This document shows positions 5,484 to 62,049 of a DNA stretch of 64,000 bases, piece by piece. The notes under the pieces were generated by a model that was given only the letters and a program-made list of their open reading frames with translations, was not told the origin of the DNA and searched no databases. The first letter of the stretch is position 1. Each line of letters opens with the position of its first letter. The stretch is taken from the sequence record NC_061441.1. The stretch is one strand, 5' to 3'. A program made the translations under genes and the position numbers.

Positions 5484-6305
5484 TTAGTCTCCCACTGCCG
5501 TGTACCAGAAGTCCCAGCCTACAGTATTGGTGCCGCTGGACTTAATGGTAAAGCCACCTAACAAGGCGTTCTCGTTCACTGCACTAGTACCATCAAGGTT
5601 GTAGAGCGTAAACGTCTTAGCCTGGTTCGTTGCAGCATTCAAGAACGTAATCTGAATGCTAAGGCAGCGGTTGATGAACGGGCTGTTGAAGATAACGTGA
5701 ATGGTATCAGTAGTTGATTTGTTCACGATGCGACCCATGTTCTGGGTAAAGCCCGTGTTCATATCTCTGTTACTACCGACCCATGCGTTTGGAATCACAG
5801 CACCTGTTACAGGGTCAAGTGCTTGCGCTGTTCGATACTCGTCGATAGCAGCATCACGCCCCGGGTTACCAGTAGGACCCGTCGCACCAGTAGGACCGAC
5901 TGCTCCAGTGTTACCAGTAGCGCCAACAGGACCAGTGTTGCCCGTAGGACCATTACGTCCTCTTGGACCACGAGGGCCTGGGCAGCCGTCTTCACCGTCA
6001 CGACCGTCACGACCGTCAGCACCAGGCAGACCGCGTAAGCCGTCTTTACCCTGCTTGCCTTCGCGCCCTGACTTGAGCTGGTCGGCAGTAGGCAAACCAA
6101 TAACGTTCGTCTGACTGCCATCAGGCCAAATGAGTGTTAACGTACCTGTTGTCGTATCGAACTGAGCACCCTGAGCACCTGGAATCTTCGCAGCTTCTTG
6201 CGGACTGATAAACGCGACCGCAGTAGAAGTCTTCTTACCTAGCACTTTACCGACGGGGTCATTACCACCGTCGATGAGTGAAGGATTAATGCGTGTTAAA
6301 GACAT
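5484..6305 (-). CDS. Collagen-like fibre protein D (24 Gly-X-Y triplets, C-terminal beta-sandwich tip domain)
   Basis: GREGKQGKD...GNPGRD repeat; N-terminal FDTTTGTLTL..GLPT domain; C-terminal 'VIFNSPF...GFTI...WDFWYTAVG' typical fibre-tip domain. Confidence 0.8.
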   Translation of the reverse strand: MSLTRINPSLIDGGNDPVGKVLGKKTSTAVAFISPQEAAKIPGAQGAQFDTTTGTLTLIWPDGSQTNVIGLPTADQLKSGREGKQGKDGLRGLPGADGRDGRDGEDGCPGPRGPRGRNGPTGNTGPVGATGNTGAVGPTGATGPTGNPGRDAAIDEYRTAQALDPVTGAVIPNAWVGSNRDMNTGFTQNMGRIVNKSTTDTIHVIFNSPFINRCLSIQITFLNAATNQAKTFTLYNLDGTSAVNENALLGGFTIKSSGTNTVGWDFWYTAVGD

Positions 6306-11476: not shown

Positions 11477-11968
11477 TTATGGGCGAACCCAAATAGCTCC
11501 TGGAGCTACTTCGTTGTCTATAGCAGGGTCAGTGTCTTGAACAAACACCTGTACTGCACCAGGATTACCGGGAGCACCCGTTGCGCCAGTAGGACCAGTT
11601 GGACCGGCAGGACCACGATTACCCACATAACCCTGTTTACCCATCTGACCATCAGAACCACGAGGACCTGGGCAACCGTCAGTACCGCGACGACCATCGT
11701 TACCCATGAGACCGTCGATACCGTCACGACCAGAAGGACCAACACCACCAGCAGGGCCATAGCCTATGCTGTGAATGGTAGGCAGCCCAGCAATCTGCAA
11801 CTTACCAATCGACGGTATATTCAGAGCAAGCACACCCGTCAGAGCATCAAACGAACCGTTGAGTGTGCTGTCATCTTCGGCAGTGTCTACTGTCAGACCG
11901 CCTTGAGTCGCTACGACAGGACCAGATGCGTTGGTCTTGACTAGCGCTATATCAACTTTTTCTACCAT
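11477..11968 (-). CDS. Collagen-like fibre protein C (23 triplets)
   Basis: GPAGGV...GNPGAV repeat; N-domain FDALTGVLAL..GLPT; ends QDTDP..APGAIWVRP. Confidence 0.85.
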   Translation of the reverse strand: MVEKVDIALVKTNASGPVVATQGGLTVDTAEDDSTLNGSFDALTGVLALNIPSIGKLQIAGLPTIHSIGYGPAGGVGPSGRDGIDGLMGNDGRRGTDGCPGPRGSDGQMGKQGYVGNRGPAGPTGPTGATGAPGNPGAVQVFVQDTDPAIDNEVAPGAIWVRP

Positions 11969-11977
11969 GATTACTCC

Positions 11978-12610
11978 TTACGGCCAGGTAGTGCCTTGAT
12001 CTTTTGTCGGGTCAACCCAGATTGTTCCAGCAGCAACTGCGCCTGGCTGGGTAGCACTCACAATGATAGACAGACGACCAGCAGGACCCGCTGCACCAGT
12101 AGGACCTGTAGGACCTGTAGCGCCAGTCTTACCAGTAGGGCCTGTGCCACCACGAGGACCAGTAGGTCCTGTAGGCCCCATAGGACCTGTGCGACCGTCT
12201 GGGCCAGTAGGACCAACAGGTCCAGGCAGACCATCACGTCCATCTGGACCTGGAATACCCTGTTCCCCGTCAGGACCTATCTCACCGTCACAGCCCTGTT
12301 CACCAGGATTACCGTCACGCCCATCACGACCGTCTTTGCCGTCTGCACCAGTTTCACCACGACCACCCTGACGACCTTCTGGTATGTCAGCAGCAGTAGG
12401 GAAACCATTGACCTTAACAGTCTGGCCATTAGCAAACTTGAGCGTTAGAATACCGCTGGTGGCATCGAACGACGAGTCGGCAGTAAGCTCGGACGGCACG
12501 TCTGCATCAGAAGGATTGATAGTCAGCGTACCGCGCGAAGCTCTGATTGGAGTGGGCGTAGAGGACGAACCAGCTTGAATGAGGCCCGTGTTTACTTTAA
12601 TCAGACCCAT
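11978..12610 (-). CDS. Collagen-like fibre protein B (about 34 triplets)
   Basis: GRQGGR...GPAGRL repeat; N-domain [14 protein letters not shown]; ends [17 protein letters not shown]. Confidence 0.85.
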
Positions 12611-14052
12611 TACGTTTTCTCCGCTTTAGCAACGATATCCGTATTGTGCACCAACACATCTCCTACGAAGTAACAGTCAAACGGGTCAACGTCAATATCA
12701 ACCGTCTGCACCTGCTCATCGACACGAACAAATTCAGATACAGCGATAGGTCCTTTACGACCTAAGACAGTTTGGCCCATGCGAACATCACGCGCAGGAA
12801 CATAGCGCCATACGGACTCATCATAAATCAATACTGGGTGTTCGTGAGTGAACTTCTGACCATTGATAACATAGTAATGATCTTCTTGGCCGAGCTTCAA
12901 CGCTTTCACCGTAGCGTACACGGTGTTGCCTTTGAGACTAGGCGAAGACCAATTACGAAACTCCTTAGGCTGGTTCGAGTAACCAAGCAGCGCATCGCCG
13001 ACACGCAAGTTCTCTACAGCTTTAGGACCAACGATAGTGTTCACGGTACTGCCAAACACGATACAACCAGATGTTGCAGTGTTGATAGGGTTACGCGCCA
13101 CGACAGTCAGAGCAGAACGCACCGTAACAGTCGGACGTGAAGGTTGACCCATATCAGTTACGAGACAGCTAATGGTGCCTTTGATTGTACGATCAGCACC
13201 TAAGCCTAAACGCAGATAGAAGTTAACAATGCAGGTGTTTGTCTCGACGGCATCCAGAGTCACACCTTCTGTGGTTGTGATAGTCCATTTATACTTATAC
13301 GGACCAACGCCACCACGAGCATTGACAGGCAGATACGCCAGCGACGTAAACACATCAGAGCCTTGCACTGTACGTTGACCCACCATGTACAGATTAGACA
13401 CTGACGCAGCAAGAGGTGTGATTGTAGGCAGAGGCGGCGCAGGAGTAACGTTGGCTGTAGGGTACAACCAAACGAACACTTTACCGTCTGTAGGCTGCGT
13501 GTTAGATAGCACGGCTGTAGTGATAGGCGCTGGACCAGTAGCACCAGTAGCCCCCGCAATACAGCTAGGACCATCATTACCACGAGGGCCGATAGGACCA
13601 GTAGCACCAGTCGCGCCGTCAGGACCAGTAGGACCGTCAGGCCCTTGACGCCCTGTATCTCCTGGAGGACCGTCTTCACCGTCACGTCCAGGGTCACCTA
13701 CAGGACCAGTCTTACCTCTATTGCCTACACCGCCCGGACAACCTTGTTTGCCGGTCTCACCATCACGCCCGTCACGACCATCTCGACCAGGAGAACCCGG
13801 AGCGCCTCGACGCCCAGGTTTACCTTCGCCAAACATCGCAACAGTGGGCAACCCAGGGATGTTCACCACATCCCCGTTCTGCTTGATGAATACCAACACA
13901 CCTGTCTTGCTGTTAAATCTTACGCTGGCGAGCTGTGTTAATGTTGCCACATCGGAGTTTTCAAACTTAGCCACTCCGTCAACACCGATCAATGATTTAC
14001 CTTCATCGTTCGGAGTTGTTTCGACTTGCGAAAGTTTTAACTGTGTTGTCAT
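12610..14052 (-). CDS. Collagen-like fibre protein A with Ig-like domain and C-terminal Hint (intein-like) domain (480 aa)
   Basis: 29+3 Gly-X-Y triplets; PKD/Ig-like segment ([11 protein letters not shown]); Hint motifs SG|CIVFGS, FTHEHP, TVDIDV, VLVHN|T. Confidence 0.85.
12643..13065 (-). other. Hint/mini-intein domain (141 aa), no endonuclease
   Basis: Cys1 codon at 13063-13065, block B TxxH (THEH), block F Asp, penultimate His-Asn ending at 12643, +1 Thr. Confidence 0.8.
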
Positions 14053-23927: not shown

Positions 23928-24497
23928 TCGACCTAAACTTTTACTCTCCACACGACTACAAGGAAGAATCGCGTTTCTGTGACCTGCGGATGTTTATCAC
24001 TCTCAGACTCTTGAGCCACTATCTGGAAGCTAACACGCTGAGTCGTCCGCTGGATGACGTGTTAGCTCTCCTCTCCTCGTCGTGCGAAGGCCAGAGTGGT
24101 AGCTGATGGATTGTCATGAAGGAATCCCTGGGGGTCATCGCTTCCCAATGCACACAGGGTGAAAGCCTATGCACATCAGGCAGCGTCTGCTGCGGTACTG
24201 CTGTCCCCTTGAGAGTGGCCATAGCGTTGAGTTTGCGCTTCGCCAGTCTACGTGCCTGGAAGGTATCTGCCGTGCCTATGTCTGCATTCAGCATGGTTCC
24301 TTTGCTGGGCCTTTTGGGCGTCAGCGACAGAGCAGATATTCATCACGTGGGTGCCGGGGTTGTCCTCACGATTACAGAGCGAACTCAAACCGGCTGGAGG
24401 CCCATATGCTCAGGAATGCACATACGAGTTTACCAGAAGAACGGCCCCGCTATGGTAGCGTTCTTCCGAGACATACTGATATTACTATCTGCAATTT

Positions 24498-24507
24498 TTA
24501 TTTACAG
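24498..24507 (-). promoter_or_regulatory. Putative promoter element CTGTAAATAA
   Basis: AT-rich inverted-repeat context (ATCTGTAA..TTGCAGAT); identical decamer upstream of the ligase gene. Confidence 0.35.
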
Positions 24508-24514
24508 ATTTTTC

Positions 24515-24577
24515 TTAACCTTCGCCCCAACCACAAGAAGCAGGTTTACCGTCACCGTAACCGATTTTAAACAGCAT
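24515..24577 (-). CDS. Unannotated 20-aa peptide (MLFKIGYGDGKPASCGWGEG)
   Basis: AAGGA RBS overlapping the stop of the upstream gene; codon choice (GGT, AAA, GCT, TCT) like the highly expressed genes. Confidence 0.45.
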   Translation of the reverse strand: MLFKIGYGDGKPASCGWGEG

Positions 24578-24586
24578 AGTTAGTCC

Positions 24587-47444: not shown

Positions 47445-48620
47445 TTAAACTTTTCTGCTATCAATGTCAGCTTGTGGAATATAGCGATTTTCGAAGTATT
47501 TATTGACTACTTCTACTCCGTTTAACGTATAAACGTTACGCATACTATCACCCCAAACCATTAGCTCTGCGAGGGTCGCAAAGTGTTCTGCGGGCACTGT
47601 ATTTATGGTACGTGCGTTCAAGCTATCTGGGTGGATTTTCTTACCACGGATGGCCTGATCGAACTTCATACGGTCAACATTTCGTATCATCGTATGGTCA
47701 ACAAAGTGCGCCAATTCGTGGGTCATTGCATGGCCAAATGAACGGCTATTATAACCCCCGAACAAGTCCACCAACTGCTTTGGACTCATTGAAATTACAC
47801 CATACAGGAATCCTGACACGGTATAAGTAGCAATATGTGACCCACCAACATCGTTACCCTGTTTAACGATACCCACATACAGGCGTTTAAACGGCAGCGG
47901 CACATTAAGACCTATGCCTGGCATGACATTTTCCTGAATGTCTTTGAGAACATAGTCAGGAGGACTCACGCCGTCCAGCAGGATTTTCTTGCCACCTATA
48001 CGCAGTTCGTCAGCACCCAATACCTCAAGATGCACATTGCCACAACGTGGTATCTTCTGGACTGCGTAGTTATTTGGCGTACCACCCGGATAGTTAGCGT
48101 TTGCATACACCAAGGCTTTCATATCACCGAACTGCGGCATGTCCATTAGACGGCGCTGTTTGGCTTTGAGCGACTCTGGCGTATCTACACCGAACTGATC
48201 AAGAGGGCCATCGGCTGGTGTATCTTGTTCGGGCGCTGGAGCTTCTACTTGCATGGGTTTCGCTTTGACAGACACAGGCTTCGGCTTTGGTGCAGCAGCT
48301 TTCTGCTTTTCCTCGTAAGGAACGAAGTCGAATCCAGGCTTGAAGAGGGCGTCAGGCTTAGCCGTGAATGGGCGACTCTGCGATACTACGCGGTCACCGT
48401 CTTCTCCACTGATTGCATAAGCCATGTCGTATTTAGGATGGGCTATGTAGTACAGGTCGTCACTCACTTTGACCAGACCTACAACCTCGCGTGTATGCAG
48501 ATGCACACCGTTTGAGATCATAGCGTCCGGCCCAAGGTAACGATAGTACGAATAGTCTGCTATGGACATATCGGACATCAAGCCATCCGCAGCAGATGTT
48601 CTTTGTACGTTGCAGCACAC
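47445..48620 (-). CDS. Zincin-like HExxH metallopeptidase-domain protein with shared N-terminal domain (likely start 48578)
   Basis: HAMTHELAHFVDH, downstream PAEHFA; TGATG coupling to the protease stop suggests the start is MSDMS. Confidence 0.7.
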   Translation of the reverse strand: MCCNVQRTSAADGLMSDMSIADYSYYRYLGPDAMISNGVHLHTREVVGLVKVSDDLYYIAHPKYDMAYAISGEDGDRVVSQSRPFTAKPDALFKPGFDFVPYEEKQKAAAPKPKPVSVKAKPMQVEAPAPEQDTPADGPLDQFGVDTPESLKAKQRRLMDMPQFGDMKALVYANANYPGGTPNNYAVQKIPRCGNVHLEVLGADELRIGGKKILLDGVSPPDYVLKDIQENVMPGIGLNVPLPFKRLYVGIVKQGNDVGGSHIATYTVSGFLYGVISMSPKQLVDLFGGYNSRSFGHAMTHELAHFVDHTMIRNVDRMKFDQAIRGKKIHPDSLNARTINTVPAEHFATLAELMVWGDSMRNVYTLNGVEVVNKYFENRYIPQADIDSRKV

Positions 48621-49357
48621 GCGAATGCTGGATCATCAACCGAGCTACATTCGAAGCCAGTCAACATCTTGCAATCACGATACACCAGACGGCCTGTACG
48701 ACCATCGAGGTAAGTAGGCTTATTGAATGCCGTGTGCGAACAGAAGTTACGATGACGCGGTGTAACCAACTGACCACAGATACTGCACTTATATGCCTTG
48801 TACGTTGTGCCTTTAGAGTACGTGTTAAGCTCGCCGCTCAGAATACGGTCGCAACGCTCTTTGCAGCGTGTACGGTCGAACGCCAGCAGCAGAGTCAGAC
48901 GCGCATGGTTGCCACGGAAGTTTTGCAGCTTCGACAGGTTCGAGTCAAAGATCATTCCCATTGCCTGGCGGTAATCTTTGTTGTTGTGCTCGATGAACGT
49001 AGGCTTACCGATGAACGTTTGATAAGCAAGACGGCCTTGGTCTGGATTGAATGTCAGCCATTCTTGCAGTGAGAACGCATCACCGTTAGTGTTCGGCAGT
49101 TCAGTGATATTCACAGGAACAGGCACGATGATGTAGTCACGAATATCTCGCGAGGTGTTGTACTGCTCGGCCGCTTTAGGCAGCCACACGTTCACGTCAA
49201 GATTAAACGAGCCTGATTGAATGCCGAAACGCGACGCATCTACACGAATGGATTTAGCATCACGGCTAACATCTTCTTTGTGCATATCAATCGCGTTTAG
49301 ACCAACAAGGCCCATATCCGAGGTATCAAAAGACTCGGAGCGAATGGACTGGTCCAT
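48578..49357 (-). CDS. Prohead (capsid maturation) protease
   Basis: FIGKPTFIEHNNKD...AMGMIFDS, ELNTYSKG (catalytic Ser region), C..CG, FECSSVDDPAF: HK97/herpes-assemblin-type pattern. Confidence 0.8.
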   Translation of the reverse strand: MDQSIRSESFDTSDMGLVGLNAIDMHKEDVSRDAKSIRVDASRFGIQSGSFNLDVNVWLPKAAEQYNTSRDIRDYIIVPVPVNITELPNTNGDAFSLQEWLTFNPDQGRLAYQTFIGKPTFIEHNNKDYRQAMGMIFDSNLSKLQNFRGNHARLTLLLAFDRTRCKERCDRILSGELNTYSKGTTYKAYKCSICGQLVTPRHRNFCSHTAFNKPTYLDGRTGRLVYRDCKMLTGFECSSVDDPAFACAATYKEHLLRMA

Positions 49358-49367
49358 CGTGTTCTCC

Positions 49368-49829
49368 CTATTGGAAATTGTTGATGTTATCGGCGCTTGC
49401 GTTAGCCAAACGAACGCAACCCTCTTCGACTTGGAAGCCGTTGAGTCCGTCCATAGTGCTTAGCCAGTAGCGCAGCCGTCCATCTGAAATTACTGCGTTT
49501 TCAACATACGCAGGAACTTCTTTGCCCGAATCTTTGAACGTGGCAATGACTTCAACGCCAGGGTAGAACACGTCGAATGACTTCGTGCTGAATATAGGCT
49601 TGACGATATCGGTCTCGGTCACTGGGTGCATTGCGTAGCGACTCTGAATCATGTACAGAGCCTCAGTTGCTCCGATAAGAATCGAGTTGATTGTGCCACG
49701 CAACTGACAACGTTCAGTACCCTCTAAATTGCGCCCGTGATAGAACGTCACGATATCGCCGATGTTATAATCAAAAGAGAACTGGGCCATGTTAACCTCG
49801 CAGCGCACCACGTGCCCAAGACTTGGCAA
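49368..49829 (-). CDS. Hypothetical protein with two SH3/KOW-like repeats (likely start MAQFS)
   Basis: Repeats YNIGDIVTF...G.I..I.I...LY.I and FYPGVEVIA...AYV..A.I...RYWL. Confidence 0.6.
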   Translation of the reverse strand: MPSLGHVVRCEVNMAQFSFDYNIGDIVTFYHGRNLEGTERCQLRGTINSILIGATEALYMIQSRYAMHPVTETDIVKPIFSTKSFDVFYPGVEVIATFKDSGKEVPAYVENAVISDGRLRYWLSTMDGLNGFQVEEGCVRLANASADNINNFQ

Positions 49830-50730
49830 GAGCCAGAGTCATACGGCTTGGGTTTTGCAGTTTGACTTCACCTTTATGTACGGCAGTGAATGGCTCATGA
49901 GCATTCTCACCACGGCCTGAACGATATGCAGCTTCATTGAAACCGTCGAATAGCGTTACAACCCAGCCGGTGGACTTATCAGAACATTCACCACACGCTT
50001 TGTCCCAGCTAATCTTACCGCAAGTACGTCCACCAGCATTCACTGCATAACTTACTTGCTCGGTACCTTTATACAGGTCCTGAGCTTTCATCGCTTTGAA
50101 CGTCACGCGAGTAGAAGATTCCGAGCGAGGCATCATCTTCTCTTTCAGTGCTTCAATGTCCAGAGAACTCCAGAACGATTCAAACAGCGCAGCGAACTTC
50201 TGCTCAATAGGCAGGCCGATTGTGTTGATCTGTGCGATAGTGCTGGAGCTGTCGTTCAGCACACGGTTAAGGAAATAGCCACCGAGAATTACAGGCATCT
50301 GGGTGCCTTGTGCGCCAGCCGTAAGGCCAGCACGTTTCGCGTACATATCACACATACCGATAGCAAGACGCGCCAACGTCATGAACGTCTGCTTCTCGGT
50401 ACTGTTAGCGATCTCCGTGTAGATACGCGCAGCGATTGCAGGCACTACAGTACGTTTCGCCACGCTTAGGATATCTTCTGGAGAGATGGCCTGACCGAGT
50501 TTCTTCTTGGCAGCCAGTTCGAAAGCATTAATCAGGCTTGCTTTGTTCGCTGGTGTCAGAGACTCGCTCAACTTGATAGTCGTCTGCTCGGAGCTGTTCA
50601 CCAGACTCGGCTGCGGTGCTACTTTCAGTCTGCGGACTCCCGTCGTGTTCAATCGAGCTACTGTCATTTGTTTCTTCCTGAGTAGGAGCCTGTAGATATT
50701 GCAGCAGGCCAGAGTTAATGATCTCCTCAT
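49792..50730 (-). CDS. Hypothetical (putative head-associated) protein; likely start 50667
   Basis: RBS AGGAAG before MTVARLN; contains LSES and RSES motifs. Confidence 0.65.
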   Translation of the reverse strand: MRRSLTLACCNIYRLLLRKKQMTVARLNTTGVRRLKVAPQPSLVNSSEQTTIKLSESLTPANKASLINAFELAAKKKLGQAISPEDILSVAKRTVVPAIAARIYTEIANSTEKQTFMTLARLAIGMCDMYAKRAGLTAGAQGTQMPVILGGYFLNRVLNDSSSTIAQINTIGLPIEQKFAALFESFWSSLDIEALKEKMMPRSESSTRVTFKAMKAQDLYKGTEQVSYAVNAGGRTCGKISWDKACGECSDKSTGWVVTLFDGFNEAAYRSGRGENAHEPFTAVHKGEVKLQNPSRMTLALAKSWARGALRG

Positions 50731-51772
50731 TCACATCCTGACCACGAAGCGTAGCGAGATGTGCGAGGTAATTGAGTGCGGGTTCGACCATACCCAGATT
50801 GCGACAGCCCCAATAGGCTATGTCATAACACAGGTCTAAATTAATAGCGGTCTGGTCGAACAGGAAACCTTTTGGATTCTGCTTGGTCGCTTCAATGCCC
50901 TGAACAGCCATACCGATAGCATTGATGTTATCGCCGTGTCGGTAGAAGATATCGGCCAGCATCGAATACGCTTCAATGCGGTCAGGACGGAATGCTATAG
51001 CGCGATAACACGCACACACCGCTTCCTGAGTGAAGCCCTGCTTGTATGCGGCTTTCGCTAGTTCGATGTTGGCGATTGTAACGTAATCCGCCCACTTAGC
51101 AATGCCTGCCAAGCGGTCTACTTCGCGCCGTGCGTCTTCGAGCAAATCAGGACGTTCGTAATACGCAACGGCATAGCAGAGTTCACGCGCATAGTAGAAA
51201 CTGCAACGGTCATCATGCGGATAGTCACCAACATCACGTCCAAGCTCCAGCAGATAGTTACGGCCTTTGCTGTGGTCTGGATAGTGATCGGTGGCGAACG
51301 GAGCTTCAACCGTTCTGAGTTGCTGTCCAGGCTTACGCGAGGTCAGCACTTCATGCGCACGATATTTCCAGAAATAAGAACGACGGCGGTAGGCCTTCAT
51401 CTGACTGTAGTGGCTGTCACCATTGCGCATCAGAATCCAAACAGCTTCTGCCTTCTTAATGCCTTGCATTGTGCGCAGCTTCTCAACCCAATCAGGGTCA
51501 TCGAAACGCTCATCAATATCAAGCCACACTACAAGGTCATCTTCGGAGAATGGCGTAGCGGCCAGTTCACGACTTGCACCAAGGTTACGCTCTTGACTAA
51601 CATCAAACGTGTGGTAGATGTTAGGGTGCGGGAACGCCGAGATGATGTTTGTGGTTTGGTCTTCGCTGCCTGTATCGACAATGCTAATCGCATCAGCCTT
51701 GGCTACGTGCTTCAACCACTCACCCATATTCTTTTCTTCATTGCGACAGATAGCCGCTACGCAAATTCTCAT
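50528..51772 (-). CDS. GT2-family glycosyltransferase with C-terminal TPR repeats
   Basis: ICRNEEKNM, IVDTGSEDQT, WLDIDE (DxD), WKYRAHE, DDRCSFYYARE, TPR helices (YRAIAFRPDRIEAY). Confidence 0.9.
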   Translation of the reverse strand: MRICVAAICRNEEKNMGEWLKHVAKADAISIVDTGSEDQTTNIISAFPHPNIYHTFDVSQERNLGASRELAATPFSEDDLVVWLDIDERFDDPDWVEKLRTMQGIKKAEAVWILMRNGDSHYSQMKAYRRRSYFWKYRAHEVLTSRKPGQQLRTVEAPFATDHYPDHSKGRNYLLELGRDVGDYPHDDRCSFYYARELCYAVAYYERPDLLEDARREVDRLAGIAKWADYVTIANIELAKAAYKQGFTQEAVCACYRAIAFRPDRIEAYSMLADIFYRHGDNINAIGMAVQGIEATKQNPKGFLFDQTAINLDLCYDIAYWGCRNLGMVEPALNYLAHLATLRGQDVNEEIINSGLLQYLQAPTQEETNDSSSIEHDGSPQTESSTAAESGEQLRADDYQVERVSDTSEQSKPD

Positions 51773-51787
51773 ACATGCCTCATTGGG

Positions 51788-52705
51788 TTATACTAAAACG
51801 TTACCACTATCCCACCAGCGCTTACCGTAGATATCAGACACACGGTATTCGAGGATGAGAGGTTGGTCCAGGTCGACTTGTGTTATGTATCGCTGTAGAG
51901 AAGGACTCCACACTGTTTTCTCCTCAGTGTAAAGTCGTATCTCCAGCTCAACGTCGCCTTGAGAGTTCTTCGGTACGAACGGATGAGAATAGTCCCCATC
52001 GAAACCCGCACCAAGAGAGTCGTCGAAGTAAGTGAATGCGCGAACTTCTTCACCAGTGTTGATGATCGTGGGTGCATACACTTGACGGTTATAATACGCA
52101 GTATAGTCGGCAACAGTTGTCTGCCAAACTGTACGGCGCTTATAGATACGCGTCACGCCTTTGCTGTCTGTCTCCGCACGATATTGGTTGTAGTACCAAG
52201 TTATCTGTGCGAACTTAACAGGCTTCAACGGTGTTTGACCAGACGCATATTTCATGAACGGCTTCGCAGTGAAACGGTGATATGTCTTCTGCGTGTTCAA
52301 GCGATAAAGCAGAACCTGATACGTGTACCACTGATAAACATCGAGGGTAATCGTACCTGAGTCTGATTGCTGCGTACCGTTAGTAAGGATGTATGCGAAA
52401 CAGTCCGTACCTACGTAGCCGCTGCGTGGGTTATAGAGGAACGCATCGCTAAAGTTGTTCAGTTGCACTGTGCCTACCATCGGGTCATTGACCTTGATCG
52501 CAGAAAGGCGCCAACCCCTTTGAGCTGGCACCTTATCAAGCACACCCTCAGTCGGGCTATGCAACGTCACTTCATCACGAGCGCCTTGTAAGATCTTTTC
52601 GAGCGTTATCTCGGTCTTACCCGAGTTACGCACTCGCACCGTAAGGTTCGGAGCTAATGGTTTGTAATTGCGCCAATAGTCGAACGTACAAGGCAAAGAG
52701 AGCAT
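51788..52705 (-). CDS. Virion protein with cadherin/Ig-like (Big_9-like) domain (305 aa)
   Basis: P..GTV.L....FLYNPRSGYVGTDCFAYILTNG. Confidence 0.65.
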   Translation of the reverse strand: MLSLPCTFDYWRNYKPLAPNLTVRVRNSGKTEITLEKILQGARDEVTLHSPTEGVLDKVPAQRGWRLSAIKVNDPMVGTVQLNNFSDAFLYNPRSGYVGTDCFAYILTNGTQQSDSGTITLDVYQWYTYQVLLYRLNTQKTYHRFTAKPFMKYASGQTPLKPVKFAQITWYYNQYRAETDSKGVTRIYKRRTVWQTTVADYTAYYNRQVYAPTIINTGEEVRAFTYFDDSLGAGFDGDYSHPFVPKNSQGDVELEIRLYTEEKTVWSPSLQRYITQVDLDQPLILEYRVSDIYGKRWWDSGNVLV

Positions 52706-52707
52706 AG

Positions 52708-54681
52708 TTACTCCAGTTTGTACTTGCTCTTAAACTCTGCGAGTCCCATAACAGGGATGCCTTTGTCCATCGCTTTCTGGAGTTTCGCAGAACCAGAGCC
52801 AGGGTCTTTTGCGATCAGTATCGTCGTATCGGCTTTCATGCTATCAGAAGCAGTACCACCAAGTTCAACGATACGCTTCATCAGGTCGCGATCACGAATG
52901 CCTGTGAATGCTACGTTAACGCCTTTTAGCTTGGAGCTAACCACTTTCACTTTCTTCGGAGCAACGAGAGTCACGCCCATATTCGCGGCCATCATGTATG
53001 ACTTAACAGCAGCTTCTGCGATGGCAGGACCGAGCTTGTCGATGCCGTGCATACCACTAATCTTGAGAACAAGGTCTGCGGTATATCCACGCTTGAGGTA
53101 ATACTCAAGGTTAGGAATGGCGTCAACAACTTTGTCGAACGTAGTGTTAGCACCGCGCATGAAGAATGACGCTGTAGCTTTCAGCCACGTATTCATCGGC
53201 ACACCAGCTTTCAACGCTTTGAGGTCTTTAGCCAGTTGACGACCGCGAGAGTCGCCTACGATTTCACGCAGCGCACTCATTGAAGCACTAAACAACTGCT
53301 CAGGAGTTTTGATGCCGGACTCAACAAGCATCTTACAAGTACCAGGGCCCGTGTTCGCAACGTCCAGTCCTTTCAAGAACGAGCCAAGCATACGAGCATC
53401 AGCAGCAGACGACTTCGTTTTGACAACGAACTCTACACCACTAATCTTGTACGGCACGTCAGGCAGCTTAGGCTTCTTAGCAGGCTTGAGAATCTCCATG
53501 ATGTATGGGATTACCTTACCGCTTCGAATCAACTTAACCTTAGCACCAGGACCAAGCGGGCGTTTAGGGCCAAGCACTGCACCTTTCTTCTTCGGCTTGA
53601 GATAGCCGTGCTCAACGTAGAAACCGTTGTGCGCAGAAGCACGTTCGACAGTCACTCCACCAGGCATAACAGTAGGTGGGAACAGTGCGACAGGCGCCAG
53701 TACGCCGTACTTGGACTCTTGATAGATAACGTCTTTGACAGTCACGATCACCGTGTCCGCTTCAACGTTCATCTTGAACTTAAAGGCATGTCGTGGGTTG
53801 CTTGCCGTAGCTTTCGGCGTGGCCACATCACGAGTCATCACGATGCCGTCGAGTTCATACTTCGCTTTGGCTATACGCTTGTCTAACCAAGGAATGAGTT
53901 CTTCCTGATTGTCGAAACGTAATGGACCAAAGTGACGCACTACCTCGAATCCCCACTTGTCTAACAGTTTGAACTGTTTCGACTGCGAGAGCGTGGCACC
54001 TTTACCACCGATGATACCGAAGCATACCATGTGGACGTACTTGAACTCTTTAGAAGTTTCAAAGTTACGGATGAGTCCTGACGCAGCGTTACGTGCGGCC
54101 TTAAAGCGACCACCAGCAGATTCGTGCAGCTTCGCCATAAAGGTCTTGTAGGGAATCAGCGCTTCACAGCGTATAACCACCTGACCCTTTTCTGGGATTT
54201 TCTGAGGAATGCGCATGGCCGGAAGGTGCTGAGACACATCCTTACCGTGAGTAGCATCGCCGCGAGTAAGCGCACGAACAGGCACACCCTTCTCGTAAAC
54301 GATTTCAATACTCAAGCCATCGAGCTTATCTGTCAGAATCCAGTCAACGTCTTCGGCCAGTGCCTTAGACAGTTGCTTACCGCCGAGCGTGTACTGATCG
54401 AGACTCGCCATAGGAACAGGCAGCTTAACATCGGAATCATCACGAGCACCGATCTTACGAGCCAGCTTGGACTTAGGCCAGCGCGTGTCGATATAGCGAC
54501 GAATATGGTCATAGACCGCATCCGATATCAAGCCTTCCGAATCAGTGTGGAACGCATCATCAAGATGCGCCACAAGTTTCGTTGTCTGCGTCAGATTGAG
54601 CGTGTCCAGAACCTTATCAGGATTCCTTTCGAGCCGCTTCAATGAGATTTGCATGTTGTTTTCTCCGATCGTCATCAACAC
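52708..54681 (-). CDS. ligA: NAD+-dependent DNA ligase (likely start 54654)
   Basis: ISDAVYD (Ia domain), MASLD, KLDG (adenylation motif I), TRGD..GKDV, ARNAASG, ELDGIV, FKFK, OB fold, C-terminal BRCT (VAFTG, TTILIA, GSAKLQKA). Confidence 0.95.
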   Translation of the reverse strand: MLMTIGENNMQISLKRLERNPDKVLDTLNLTQTTKLVAHLDDAFHTDSEGLISDAVYDHIRRYIDTRWPKSKLARKIGARDDSDVKLPVPMASLDQYTLGGKQLSKALAEDVDWILTDKLDGLSIEIVYEKGVPVRALTRGDATHGKDVSQHLPAMRIPQKIPEKGQVVIRCEALIPYKTFMAKLHESAGGRFKAARNAASGLIRNFETSKEFKYVHMVCFGIIGGKGATLSQSKQFKLLDKWGFEVVRHFGPLRFDNQEELIPWLDKRIAKAKYELDGIVMTRDVATPKATASNPRHAFKFKMNVEADTVIVTVKDVIYQESKYGVLAPVALFPPTVMPGGVTVERASAHNGFYVEHGYLKPKKKGAVLGPKRPLGPGAKVKLIRSGKVIPYIMEILKPAKKPKLPDVPYKISGVEFVVKTKSSAADARMLGSFLKGLDVANTGPGTCKMLVESGIKTPEQLFSASMSALREIVGDSRGRQLAKDLKALKAGVPMNTWLKATASFFMRGANTTFDKVVDAIPNLEYYLKRGYTADLVLKISGMHGIDKLGPAIAEAAVKSYMMAANMGVTLVAPKKVKVVSSKLKGVNVAFTGIRDRDLMKRIVELGGTASDSMKADTTILIAKDPGSGSAKLQKAMDKGIPVMGLAEFKSKYKLE

Positions 54682-60867: not shown

Positions 60868-62049
60868 TTAGCCGCCTGTTACTTCTGGTTCTTTGTAACC
60901 CTGCAGGAAGAAGATACGCATACCGGTGTTGTTCGGACTGTTAGCAGTCAGAGCTTTGTAGGTACGTTTCTTCGGCGTGCTGCCGTCATCTTCCATTTCG
61001 TTGTACACCTGCACGTCGATCAGAGTACCGTTGGAGATAACGTCAGAAGACGCATAACCCACGATATCCATTTCGTACGGATAGCTGTAACGCTGGGTAT
61101 TGAAGCCCGCAGGCAGACGGAAGTCGAAGTGGTTATCTTCGGAGAACGGAACCATCTGATACGGGTTGATAACCGCGTAGCTATCAGCACTGTGTACGTG
61201 CGCAGGTACTGGCAGAGTCGGTGCGTTCACATCAGACTCACGCACGGTGTAGCGCATGATCTGGAACGAGCCTGGGCTGTTAGTCGCAGGACGAACTTCC
61301 AGATCGTTGTTGATAGAACCACCGCCGTTGACAGAGAACATGCAGAACAGAGGGGCTTTACCATCGACGACAACAGATCCATCAGAGTTGATAGCACGTT
61401 GAACTACCAGCCATGCACCACGGCAACCATCAGAGTCACGACCTTCAACTGCGAGATGCAGAGCGAAGCCGTGCTCAGTCAGAGCGATGTGGTAGGTAAA
61501 CGGTGATGCTTCTGGGTCTGCCCAGATCAGGCTGTCTGGGTTCTGCTGACCTGCAGTGGCGTTGGTGGCGTTGGTTGGGTACGCCATGGTGCCGCCGTAA
61601 TAAACTGCGCCGTTGCTGTTTGGAATGCCGCGATGCCAGAAGCACACGTCATAGTCACCAGCAGTACCACCAGTGTTGCCATTAAAGCGAGCACCGACCT
61701 GACCTGCGTACTCCGCGAAAGAAGTACCGCCAACGGTAACAGTACCAGTCTTAGCGATAGTGCCTGTGTCAGAGATCTGCTCTGGAGCAGCAACGTACAG
61801 GTTGGTACGCTTATCAGTGACTTTACAGGCTACACGCCAGCGCTGTTTGCCTGCACCAGTACCAGCCAATGGATCGACAGTCGCAGTAGCTTCAATAACG
61901 AATGAAGCCAGATCAGTGGATGGAATCGTCGATGCGACGGTACCGTTAACGCTCACCAGCTGGAAACCATTATCCACCAAATCCTGAAGGATAGATTTCC
62001 ACATCTTGATGTTGCTGGTGAAGCCAGATTTCACAATCAGTTTGTTCAT
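60868..62049 (-). CDS. Abundant virion structural protein, paralogue 1 (393 aa)
   Basis: Very strong codon bias; aligns by eye with 62068..63054. Confidence 0.7.
   Translation of the reverse strand: MNKLIVKSGFTSNIKMWKSILQDLVDNGFQLVSVNGTVASTIPSTDLASFVIEATATVDPLAGTGAGKQRWRVACKVTDKRTNLYVAAPEQISDTGTIAKTGTVTVGGTSFAEYAGQVGARFNGNTGGTAGDYDVCFWHRGIPNSNGAVYYGGTMAYPTNATNATAGQQNPDSLIWADPEASPFTYHIALTEHGFALHLAVEGRDSDGCRGAWLVVQRAINSDGSVVVDGKAPLFCMFSVNGGGSINNDLEVRPATNSPGSFQIMRYTVRESDVNAPTLPVPAHVHSADSYAVINPYQMVPFSEDNHFDFRLPAGFNTQRYSYPYEMDIVGYASSDVISNGTLIDVQVYNEMEDDGSTPKKRTYKALTANSPNNTGMRIFFLQGYKEPEVTGG

What the first reader, a model, noticed from the sequence alone, without database searches (positions are those of the whole stretch)
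50528..51772. GT2-TPR glycosyltransferase plus Thr-rich collagens: a possible phage fibre O-glycosylation system
Seen: an intact GT2 (DxD = DID) with TPR repeats inside the virion gene block, and four collagen fibres whose distal halves are GPT/GAT/GNT repeats. Known: Bacillus BclA and Clostridioides difficile BclA3 exosporium collagens are glycosylated in Thr-rich GxT repeats, and the C. difficile enzyme SgtA is a glycosyltransferase encoded next to bclA3; TPR domains typically recognise protein substrates. Inference: this phage may glycosylate its own collagen fibres (triple-helix stabilisation without hydroxyproline, protease or defence shielding, host range), rather than DNA or host LPS.
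Basis: partly seen in the sequence, partly recalled or inferred. Interest (0 to 1): 0.72.

Follow-up and report, generated by a model that had tools for sequence, protein, structure and literature searches.

The report
Phage enzyme likely sugar-coats collagen fibres
A jumbo Erwinia phage encodes an intact glycosyltransferase whose fold, homologues and gene neighbours in other phages and in spore-forming bacteria point to it adding sugars to the phage's own collagen-like tail fibres; such a modification has not been described for phage fibres.

Summary
The window is Erwinia phage pEa_SNUABM_16/18, an Alexandravirus with a genome of about 266 kb. The ORF at 50528-51772 (-) is an intact 414-aa GT2 enzyme. 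It has an invariant D-I-D motif, a TPR-like helical domain of about 10 helices, no membrane segment and a disordered acidic tail. Four paralogous collagen-like fibre genes lie 37-45 kb away, and Thr fills the Y position mainly after a conserved Cys triplet (25/70 triplets against 2/36 before it).

The best full-length structural matches are the peptide glycosyltransferases ThuS and SunS. A profile of the phage family aligns over both domains (99.65% probability, E 4e-25) with a Firmicutes GT2-TPR family. In 57 of 80 genomes that family sits within 3 kb of a Thr-rich collagen gene, the arrangement described for C. difficile SgtA and BclA3.

Among distant viral contigs, 33 of 53 GT loci carry collagen runs, against 0 of 61 control loci. 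Two large phage contigs place a GT of the same PHROG directly beside collagen tail-fibre genes. Within the jumbo clade the GT and the collagens co-occur in 65 of 65 records and are absent from 33 outgroup records.

There is no biochemical proof. In this genome the GT sits in the head-protease block, not beside the fibre genes.

The parts
50528..51772 (-). GT2-TPR glycosyltransferase gene (gp150, 414 aa), member of phrog_13126
   Evidence: Intact ORF. Pfam PF00535 31.6 bits, above the cut-off. phrog_13126 at E 2.8e-116. RefSeq YP_010299911.1.
51263..51772 (-). GT-A (GT2) catalytic domain, residues 1-170
   Evidence: AF2 model with beta/alpha core E3-E163 and pLDDT above 90. Foldseek matches ThuS, SunS and TarS. 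phmmer matches the GmaR GT domain at E 9e-5.
51512..51520 (-). DxD motif D85-I-D87
   Evidence: Invariant in 29 homologues that include Firmicutes proteins. Coordinates.
50711..51253 (-). TPR-like helical domain, residues 174-354 (about 10 helices)
   Evidence: AF2 secondary structure. Consensus TPR hits at residues 237-300. Foldseek matches CTPR, OGT-TPR and GmaR. Pfam TPR_11 is below threshold.
50531..50683 (-). Disordered acidic, Ser/Thr-rich C-terminal tail, residues 364-414; absent in the JA11-type and Firmicutes homologues
   Evidence: pLDDT below 50. Composition S+T 0.29, D+E 0.27. The alignment shows the tail is missing in P0038, P0040 and P0049-57.
5484..6305 (-). Collagen-like fibre gp106 (273 aa); GXY run at 5853-6068 (24 triplets)
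   Evidence: GXT 0/9 before and 7/14 after the Cys triplet. Weak match to the Gp53-like C-terminal domain.
11477..11968 (-). Collagen-like fibre gp110 (163 aa); GXY run at 11552-11758 (23 triplets)
   Evidence: GXT 0/9 before and 3/13 after the Cys triplet.
11978..12610 (-). Collagen-like fibre gp111 (210 aa); GXY run at 12071-12376 (34 triplets)
   Evidence: GXT 1/9 before and 10/24 after the Cys triplet. Annotated as a virion structural protein.
12610..14052 (-). Collagen-like fibre gp112 (480 aa) with a C-terminal Hint-type domain; GXY run at 13564-13824 (29 triplets)
   Evidence: GXT 1/9 before and 5/19 after the Cys triplet. PT-HINT at E 4e-5, below the cut-off. Annotated as a virion structural protein.
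48578..49357 (-). Context: head maturation protease gp147. The order ligase - x - GT - x - x - protease is kept across the clade.
   Evidence: phrog_18299 at E 2.6e-126. The same order is seen in PaBG and Lu11.
52708..54654 (-). Context: NAD-dependent DNA ligase gp152, upstream of the GT in all clade members examined
   Evidence: phrog_3869 at E 1.5e-155..

Best explanation
gp150 is a soluble, cytoplasmic, metal-dependent GT-A glycosyltransferase. Its TPR-like domain recognises a protein substrate. During late infection it most likely O-glycosylates Thr, and possibly Ser, residues in the Gly-X-Thr triplets of the phage's four collagen-like fibre proteins (gp106, gp110, gp111, gp112) before or during their assembly onto the virion. 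This would work like the SgtA/BclA3 pair of Clostridioides difficile spores.

Shown: the enzyme is intact and conserved; it has the fold and architecture of peptide and protein glycosyltransferases; it is homologous over both domains to a GT family that sits next to collagen genes; it is associated with collagen genes in many viral and bacterial genomes.

Inferred: the acceptor (the collagen fibres), the residue (Thr), the timing, and any benefit such as helix stabilisation or shielding. The sugar is unknown. The RefSeq name 'beta-1,4-glycosyltransferase' is the description of the matching PHROG; no test of that activity turned up here.
For: 1. Catalytic integrity. GT2 scores above the Pfam cut-off. 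DxD, DTGSxD and HE are invariant across 29 homologues.
2. Fold. The AF2 model has pLDDT 86.9. The top Foldseek hits are ThuS and SunS at E 3e-12 over 375-383 columns, followed by TPR proteins, OGT-TPR and GmaR. phmmer matches GmaR at E 9e-5.
3. No membrane segment: maximum hydropathy 0.87.
4. Homology. hhalign of the phage family against the collagen-adjacent Firmicutes family gives 99.65% probability, E 4.3e-25, over 322 columns spanning GT2 and TPR.
5. Firmicutes context. 57 of 80 loci have a GXY run of at least 8 triplets within 3 kb of the GT. The density is 27.9 runs per 100 kb near the GT against 3.1 farther away. A closer relative, P0051, lies in a locus with a GXT collagen ORF, a second GT and a spore-coat transglutaminase.
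6. Viral context. 33 of 53 distant viral loci carry collagen runs, against 0 of 61 ligase-anchored controls (Fisher p 4e-15). After dereplication this is 19 of 29 clusters, and 12 of the 14 clusters whose match reaches the TPR part. Thr makes up 67% of Y positions. Only 3 of the 53 loci share the clade's synteny.
7. Same PHROG beside fibres. GTs of phrog_13126 (E 1e-108 and 1e-117) lie directly next to collagen tail-fibre genes in L141 and L136.
8. Clade-wide co-occurrence in 65 of 65 records, with absence from the outgroup.
9. Published precedent. SgtA has the same size and architecture and glycosylates Thr in GPT peptides (PMC7157674).
Against: - In this genome and its clade the GT is not next to the collagen genes: 37-45 kb away here and 19 kb in PaBG. 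It is instead fixed in a ligase - GT - prohead protease block.
- The clade-level co-occurrence is one phylogenetic event.
- The clade's collagens are only moderately Thr-rich: 24-25% of triplets here, 14-15% in PaBG, Lu11 and NCTB, against 67% in the GT-adjacent viral collagens. Thr at the Y position is also common in prokaryotic collagens generally (my own knowledge, not tested).
- The loci of two of the nearer non-phage relatives (P0049, P0050) show no collagen gene.
- Identity to the collagen-adjacent family is only about 24%.
- No glycan has been reported on these virions in the papers searched. The PaBG proteome table lists neither the GT nor a mass anomaly.
- C. difficile SgtA itself could not be fetched for a direct comparison.
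Confidence: 0.6

Rival explanations
1. The enzyme glycosylates a different phage or host protein, for example a head protein made from the same gene block, another tail protein, or a host surface or flagellar protein. The collagen link seen in relatives does not carry over to this clade.
For: The order ligase - GT - two small ORFs - head maturation protease is conserved from Erwinia to Pseudomonas phages, even where the major head protein has moved away. No terminator-like site on the GT's strand separates the GT from the head genes. Related GT2-TPR enzymes act on non-collagen proteins: GmaR on flagellin (my own knowledge), SunS and ThuS on peptides. Mycobacteriophages glycosylate capsid and tail-tube subunits (cited in PMC12619734). 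The P0049 and P0050 loci lack collagen genes.
Against: The conserved neighbours gp149 and gp148 are poorly conserved in sequence across the clade, and no candidate Ser/Thr-rich acceptor was identified among them. The statistical association of the family is with collagen genes.
Confidence: 0.22
2. The enzyme acts on a non-protein acceptor: phage DNA bases, or a host envelope glycan such as LPS, capsule or a lipid carrier. This is what the database labels suggest.
For: The PHROG category is 'moron, auxiliary metabolic gene and host takeover' and the label is 'beta-1,4-glycosyltransferase'. There is a weak N-terminal match to GtrB-like phrog_841 at E 1e-4. Foldseek also matches TarS, WrtF and RmlT, which act on wall polymers, at E about 1e-4. 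The gene lies next to a DNA ligase.
Against: There is no transmembrane segment, which a GtrB-type lipid-carrier enzyme has (GtrB topology is my own knowledge). The TPR-like domain and the far better full-length matches to peptide glycosyltransferases point to a protein acceptor. The family's neighbours are collagen genes, not DNA-modification genes. NCBIfam gives no match to any polysaccharide enzyme family.
Confidence: 0.1
3. The GT and collagen pairing in this clade is a hitch-hiking coincidence, and the protein has mainly a non-catalytic role, for example a TPR scaffold or regulator like the anti-repressor side of GmaR.
For: Co-occurrence in the clade is a single event. GmaR is deposited as an antirepressor (7x9r) and is also a glycosyltransferase (my own knowledge).
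Against: All catalytic motifs are invariant over a divergence where the major head protein falls to 46% identity. That argues for retained enzyme activity.
Confidence: 0.05

Closest known systems
SgtA / BclA3 of Clostridioides difficile (exosporium collagen O-GlcNAc transferase and its substrate)
   Same: Same architecture and size: a GT-A domain followed by a TPR domain. SgtA is 358 aa; the structured part of gp150 is about 360 aa. SgtA's acceptors are Thr residues in Gly-Pro-Thr collagen triplets, and the enzyme is metal dependent (PMC7157674). The phage family is homologous over both domains to a Firmicutes GT family that has exactly SgtA's gene arrangement, upstream of a Thr-rich collagen gene.
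   Different: The host is a Gram-negative plant pathogen and the presumed substrates are virion fibres, not spore proteins. The GT is 37-45 kb from the collagen genes. Identity to the Firmicutes family is about 24%. Sugar and linkage are unknown here.
SunS / ThuS glycocin S-glycosyltransferases (PDB 7msn, 7msk)
   Same: Best full-length structural matches (E 3e-12, 375-383 aligned columns): a GT-A domain plus a helical repeat domain that holds a peptide substrate. A Firmicutes relative (P0053) has SunS as its best NCBIfam match, far below the cut-off.
   Different: TM-score is only about 0.5, with about 14% identity. The window protein has no NCBIfam match. No small Cys-rich glycocin-type peptide gene was identified next to it.
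GmaR of Listeria monocytogenes (flagellin O-GlcNAc transferase and anti-repressor)
   Same: GT2 domain plus TPR. It is the only natural GT in the PDB found by sequence alone (E 9e-5, residues 5-94), and its TPR part matches by fold (7x9r).
   Different: GmaR is much longer and acts on flagellin. Nothing here suggests a regulatory role.
Virion glycosylation in mycobacteriophages (Freeman et al. 2023, as cited in PMC12619734)
   Same: Phage-encoded glycosyltransferases that decorate the phage's own structural proteins.
   Different: There the acceptors are the C-termini of capsid and tail-tube subunits, and the GT genes sit beside those genes. Here the likely acceptors are collagen triple-helix fibres and the enzyme family is different. 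This comparison rests on the citation only and was not tested.
'Hairy Myoviridae' jumbo phages of the Lu11 / PaBG / Y3 / AD1 group ('Lupandier' group)
   Same: The window belongs to this clade. Its members were described with hair-like appendages on the tail (PMC6143709; PMC7412058).
   Different: The two clade papers I term-searched (PMC6143709, PMC7412058) and the 2026 jumbo-phage review mention no collagen at all. Neither PMC6143709 nor the review mentions glycosyl-, and PMC7412058 does so only for DNA glycosylases. That the collagen proteins are the hairs is my inference.

Membership tests
Glycosyltransferase family 2 (Pfam PF00535, GT-A fold) | Profile score above the Pfam gathering threshold | tested here: met
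   31.6 bits against a cut-off of 23.3, residues 5-118.
Glycosyltransferase family 2 (Pfam PF00535, GT-A fold) | DxD metal and nucleotide-sugar binding motif, and a conserved nucleotide-binding loop | tested here: met
   D85-I-D87 and D33-T-G-S-x-D38 are invariant in 29 sequences.
Glycosyltransferase family 2 (Pfam PF00535, GT-A fold) | GT-A alpha/beta fold | tested here: met
   AF2 model with pLDDT above 90 in residues 1-170. Foldseek matches SunS, ThuS, TarS and WrtF.
TPR repeat domain | Sequence profile match above threshold | tested here: not met
   TPR_11 scores 15.4 bits against a cut-off of 26.8. Single-repeat phmmer matches to consensus TPR proteins have per-stretch E-values of about 0.2-0.9.
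TPR repeat domain | Stack of antiparallel helix pairs forming a superhelix | tested here: met
   Ten helices in residues 174-354. Foldseek matches CTPR, OGT-TPR, PEX5 and MamA at E 4e-6 to 1e-4.
SgtA-type collagen O-glycosyltransferases | N-terminal GT-A domain plus C-terminal TPR domain in a soluble protein of about 355-360 aa | tested here: met
   SgtA is described in PMC7157674. The Firmicutes family is typically 355-358 aa.
SgtA-type collagen O-glycosyltransferases | Homology to GTs encoded beside Thr-rich collagen genes | tested here: met
   hhalign gives 99.65% probability, E 4.3e-25, over 322 columns.
SgtA-type collagen O-glycosyltransferases | Homology to C. difficile SgtA itself | not tested
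   No SgtA sequence could be obtained. The top-120 list was filled by Lachnospiraceae proteins.
SgtA-type collagen O-glycosyltransferases | Gene adjacent to its collagen substrate gene | tested here: not met
   The nearest collagen gene is 37 kb away in the window. The feature is met in other phage contigs, with L141 and L136 the clearest cases.
SgtA-type collagen O-glycosyltransferases | Transfers beta-O-GlcNAc from UDP-GlcNAc to Thr in Gly-Pro-Thr peptides | not testable with these tools
   This is a biochemical property. It is known only for SgtA.
SunS-family peptide S-glycosyltransferases (TIGR04195) | Profile score above the NCBIfam cut-off | tested here: not met
   The window protein has no NCBIfam match. 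The relative P0053 scores 55 bits against a cut-off of 350.
GtrB-like bactoprenol glucosyltransferases (phrog_841) | C-terminal transmembrane helices and a full-length profile match | tested here: not met
   Only residues 1-143 match, at E 1e-4. Maximum 19-residue hydropathy is 0.87.
phrog_13126 | Full-length profile match | tested here: met
   E 2.8e-116, residues 1-393 against profile positions 1-389 of 394.
Collagen triple-helix repeat proteins (PF01391), for the four fibre ORFs | Uninterrupted Gly-X-Y triplets and a profile score above threshold | tested here: met
   23-34 triplets each. Scores of 52-55 bits against a cut-off of 27.2.

The most novel reading that the evidence does not exclude
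A widespread, so far unrecognised virion-modification module exists in tailed phages: a GT2-TPR enzyme (phrog_13126 and relatives) paired with Thr-rich collagen-like fibres. It would share ancestry with the SgtA/BclA exosporium system of spore-forming Firmicutes. Many phage tail fibres or 'hairs' would then be O-glycosylated collagens, including those of Gram-negative jumbo phages, where enzyme and substrate genes have drifted apart. The same GT2+TPR fold in giant viruses, which also carry collagen-like fibril proteins (my own knowledge), hints that the pairing may reach beyond phages.
Probability: 0.5. Interest if true: 0.78.

Novelty: new variant of a known kind. Interest (0 to 1): 0.68.

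Why it matters
Glycosylation of phage particles is known so far mainly from mycobacteriophage capsids and tail tubes. Glycosylated bacterial collagens are known from Bacillus and Clostridioides spores. If the enzyme and fibre pairing seen here is real, it links the two. It would give collagen-like phage fibres a chemical coat that could affect their stability, their recognition by hosts and by immune or defence systems, and how their masses appear in proteomics.

It would also explain a gene that is conserved across a whole clade of jumbo phages of plant pathogens under consideration for biocontrol. And it would give a specific, checkable meaning to a PHROG that is currently labelled only by a generic enzyme name.

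Tried and rejected
- NCBIfam scan of the window GT found nothing.
- Sequence search of the PDB gave mostly designed TPR proteins. Only GmaR was informative.
- The loci of two nearer non-phage relatives (P0049, P0050) showed no collagen gene and no clear substrate.
- I tried to tie the family to C. difficile SgtA by a profile search with the Firmicutes alignment. It failed because the 120 rows shown were saturated with Lachnospiraceae proteins, out of 7958 hits at E 1e-30 or better.
- Two alignment calls failed because some tblastn ranges included a stop codon. I trimmed terminal stops. I left out one locus (L045) that had one internal stop.
- The neighbours of the GT (gp151, gp149, gp148) were compared with those of PaBG and Lu11 as candidate substrates. 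Only a weak match was found, between the C-terminal half of gp149 and PaBG gp261, so no conserved acceptor emerged there.
- The promoter and terminator scan was uninformative, with counts at or below those of shuffled sequence.
- The PaBG structural proteome table and the Dickeya jumbo-phage paper contain nothing on glycosylation or collagen. Nor does the 2026 jumbo-phage review.
- I considered the DNA-modification and GtrB-type readings and rated them low. The reasons are the missing membrane segment, the TPR domain and the family's gene neighbours.
Full report
**Identity of the window.** A 5-kb stretch of the window (49000-54000) is 100% identical to Erwinia phage pEa_SNUABM_16 and _18 (genus Alexandravirus, about 266 kb, host Erwinia amylovora). 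From that match, window base 1 corresponds to base 62001 of NC_061441.1. The whole window is one minus-strand block of tail, baseplate, head and a few DNA-metabolism genes.

**The observation.** The ORF at 50528-51772 (-) is intact, 414 aa, and is annotated gp150 'beta-1,4-glycosyltransferase'. That wording is also the description of phrog_13126, which the protein matches at E 2.8e-116.
- Pfam GT2 scores above its gathering cut-off, 31.6 against 23.3 bits.
- D85-I-D87, D33-T-G-S-x-D38 and H140-E141 are invariant in an alignment of 29 homologues that reaches Firmicutes proteins.
- The TPR claim fails Pfam's threshold: TPR_11 scores 15.4 against 26.8 bits.
- The TPR claim is nevertheless borne out by structure. 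An AlphaFold model built on that alignment (pLDDT 86.9, pTM 0.79) has a GT-A core in residues 1-170, ten helices in 174-354 and a disordered acidic tail in 364-414. The helical part matches consensus TPR proteins and the OGT TPR domain.
- There is no membrane segment.

**The collagen genes.** Four collagen-like ORFs are real: gp106, gp110, gp111 and gp112, at 5484-6305, 11477-11968, 11978-12610 and 12610-14052.
- They have 24, 23, 34 and 29 uninterrupted triplets.
- They are paralogues with a shared N-terminal domain of about 75 residues, a charged first part, a Cys in the tenth triplet, and then a part in which Thr fills 25 of 70 Y positions against 2 of 36 before the Cys.
- They lie 37-45 kb from the GT.

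**Fold and homology.** Foldseek against the PDB puts the peptide S-glycosyltransferases ThuS and SunS first (E 3e-12, 375-383 aligned columns, both domains). After them come TPR proteins, the OGT TPR domain, GmaR and, more weakly, wall-polymer enzymes such as TarS. By sequence alone, the only natural GT found in the PDB is GmaR, which I know as the Listeria flagellin O-GlcNAc transferase. So the architecture is that of enzymes that glycosylate peptides or proteins.

**Distribution within phage genomes.**
- tblastn finds the GT in 69 phage records and the collagen N-terminal domain in 65. By genus counts these are the same 65 records of one jumbo clade: Erwinia 48, Dickeya 8, Pseudomonas 5 (Lu11, PaBG, HRDY3), Yersinia, Alcaligenes, Salmonella and NCTB.
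- The major head protein finds 98 records. The 33 extra ones (phiRSL1, BcepSauron, Motura, the PpuM phages and others) have neither gene.
But it amounts to a single gain that was never followed by separate loss, so on its own it weighs little.
- Within the clade the GT is fixed in a block NAD ligase - variable ORF(s) - GT - two small ORFs - head maturation protease. This holds even in PaBG, where the major head protein lies elsewhere. The collagen genes are always elsewhere.

**The independent evidence.**
- While checking the gene neighbours of distant non-phage homologues, I found a collagen ORF beside one of them. The Clostridiales protein P0053 (GT2-TPR, 26% identity) is followed 39 bp downstream by an ORF of 66 triplets, 31 of them Gly-X-Thr.
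- A scan of one genome per GTDB species with an alignment led by P0053 returned 80 Firmicutes loci. 57 of them have a run of at least 8 triplets within 3 kb of the GT, mostly 130-700 bp away on the same strand and rich in Thr. The density is 27.9 runs per 100 kb near the GT against 3.1 farther away.
- A profile of the phage GT family aligns with a profile of these collagen-adjacent GTs at 99.65% probability, E 4.3e-25, over 322 columns covering both domains.
- A nearer relative, P0051, sits in a locus with a Gly-X-Thr collagen ORF, a second GT2-TPR gene and a spore-coat transglutaminase.
- The published description of C. difficile SgtA matches this family's size, architecture and gene arrangement: 358 aa, GT-A domain at residues 1-260, TPR_11 at 262-358, immediately upstream of bclA3, adding beta-O-GlcNAc to Thr (and Ser) of Gly-Pro-Thr peptides with UDP-GlcNAc and Mn2+ (PMC7157674). 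I could not fetch SgtA itself to test membership directly.

**The same association in viruses.**
- A scan of IMG/VR with the GT alignment gave 23 loci of the same clade and 53 more distant ones at 25-32% identity.
- 33 of the 53 carry collagen runs within 10 kb, 25 of them within 3 kb and 29 on the GT's strand. Thr fills 67% of Y positions.
- After clustering the GTs at 70% identity this is 19 of 29 clusters, and 12 of the 14 clusters whose match extends into the TPR part.
- Only 3 of the 53 have the clade's ligase or protease neighbours, so these are different genomic contexts.
- As a control I anchored 61 viral loci (1.11 Mb) on the NAD ligase. None has such a run (Fisher p 4e-15).
- In two large contigs the GT belongs to the same PHROG as the window's enzyme: L141 (116 kb) at E 1.7e-108 and L136 (345 kb) at E 1.5e-117. 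In both it lies directly beside collagen-like tail-fibre genes of 158 to 1410 aa.

**Most likely mechanism.** gp150 is a soluble, metal-dependent GT-A enzyme whose TPR-like domain holds a protein acceptor. The family's recurrent partner is a Thr-rich collagen. The four fibre proteins of this phage are therefore the most likely acceptors, with Thr in Gly-X-Thr triplets after the Cys knot as the probable sites. All four paralogues keep an invariant T-G-A-T-G near the end of the helix. The enzymology, the sugar, the timing and the benefit are inferred. I put this at about 0.6.

**Rivals.**
- Another protein acceptor, about 0.22. This is favoured by the conserved linkage to the head-protease block and by the lower Thr content of the clade's collagens: 24-25% of triplets here, 14-15% in PaBG, Lu11 and NCTB.
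- A non-protein acceptor such as DNA or an envelope glycan, about 0.1. Only database labels and weak partial matches favour it.
- A mainly non-catalytic role, about 0.05. The invariant catalytic residues argue against it.

**Comparison with what is known.** The system works like SgtA and BclA3, and the enzyme shares that family's architecture and is homologous to its look-alikes. The defining adjacency is not met in this genome, the chemistry cannot be tested here, and SgtA itself was not compared. It is not a SunS-family member by NCBIfam and not a GtrB-type enzyme. Literature searches found no paper that describes glycosylation of phage collagen-like fibres or discusses this gene in the Lu11/PaBG/Y3/AD1 group. 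I therefore rate it a new variant of a known kind.

Noticed in passing
window 12610-14052 (-), C-terminal third of gp112: The longest collagen fibre ends in a Hint / pretoxin-HINT type domain (PF07591 E 4e-5, Hint_2 E 1e-3, both below the cut-offs). The Y3 orthologue is annotated 'contains intein domain', and NCTB has several 'intein domain' proteins in the same fibre cluster. This suggests self-cleavage or self-attachment of a fibre protein.
   Followed up: partly
window 5853-6068, 11552-11758, 12071-12376, 13564-13824; L250, L251, L006, L252, L253: The triplet counts of the fibre paralogues (23, 24, 29, 34) and a Cys in the tenth triplet recur in all six clade members examined, from Erwinia to Pseudomonas phages. 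The 23-, 29- and 34-triplet runs are kept in PaBG (major head protein 46% identical, a second Cys in two fibres), and the 24-triplet fibre in the Erwinia and Dickeya phages. Exceptions are one JA11 fibre without the Cys and one Lu11 fibre with it elsewhere. Fibre length and a probable disulfide knot seem to be under tight constraint.
   Followed up: partly
window 47445-48578 (-), gp146: The ORF next to the head maturation protease has a KMPT-N domain (PF20294, E 1e-31) and an HExxH motif. That makes it a putative metallopeptidase inside the head-assembly block, in addition to the prohead protease.
   Followed up: no
BFVD matches to the gp150 model: The same GT2 plus helical-repeat fold is found full-length in uncultured Caudovirales proteins, some fused into proteins of about 600-800 aa. 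It is also found in giant viruses (Harvfovirus, Satyrvirus, Pithovirus, Cedratvirus, Indivirus). Giant viruses also encode collagen-like fibril proteins (my own knowledge).
   Followed up: no
L136 8985-11104; L088 824-3083: Two GT2-TPR genes sit in tandem next to the collagen gene(s), both in a 345-kb viral contig and in a Firmicutes locus. This may mean two-step or two-site glycosylation.
   Followed up: no
L168 (222-kb viral contig): Here a distant GT homologue has both a prohead-protease homologue and ten short collagen runs within 10 kb. This arrangement is intermediate between the window's clade and the collagen-adjacent contigs.
   Followed up: no
records PV359490.1 (Salmonella phage Sen-NF, 108 kb) and PV550095.1 (Alcaligenes phage Afa-NA1, 78 kb): Both records carry the clade's major head protein with the same identity and score (77.8%, 562 bits). 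Sen-NF also shows the GT and Afa-NA1 the collagen domain. Yet the records are far shorter than the 250-280 kb genomes of the clade, and they name unrelated hosts. They look like partial records of one jumbo-phage type.
   Followed up: no
window 50531-50683 (-), residues 364-414 of gp150: The enzyme has a 50-residue disordered tail rich in Ser/Thr and acidic residues. The tail is present in Alexandravirus and close relatives but missing in the JA11-type phages and in the Firmicutes homologues. Its role is unknown.
   Followed up: partly
window 51788-52705 (-), gp151: The ORF just upstream of the GT, separated by 15 bases, has a bacterial Ig-like domain (Big_9, 25.2 bits against a cut-off of 23.6). 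It has no counterpart next to the GT in PaBG or Lu11. It could be a decoration protein.
   Followed up: partly
window 24019-24294 (-) and 24116-24583 (+): RefSeq annotates two hypothetical genes on opposite strands that overlap by about 180 bases, in a short plus-strand island within an otherwise minus-strand block. At least one of the two is probably not a real gene.
   Followed up: no
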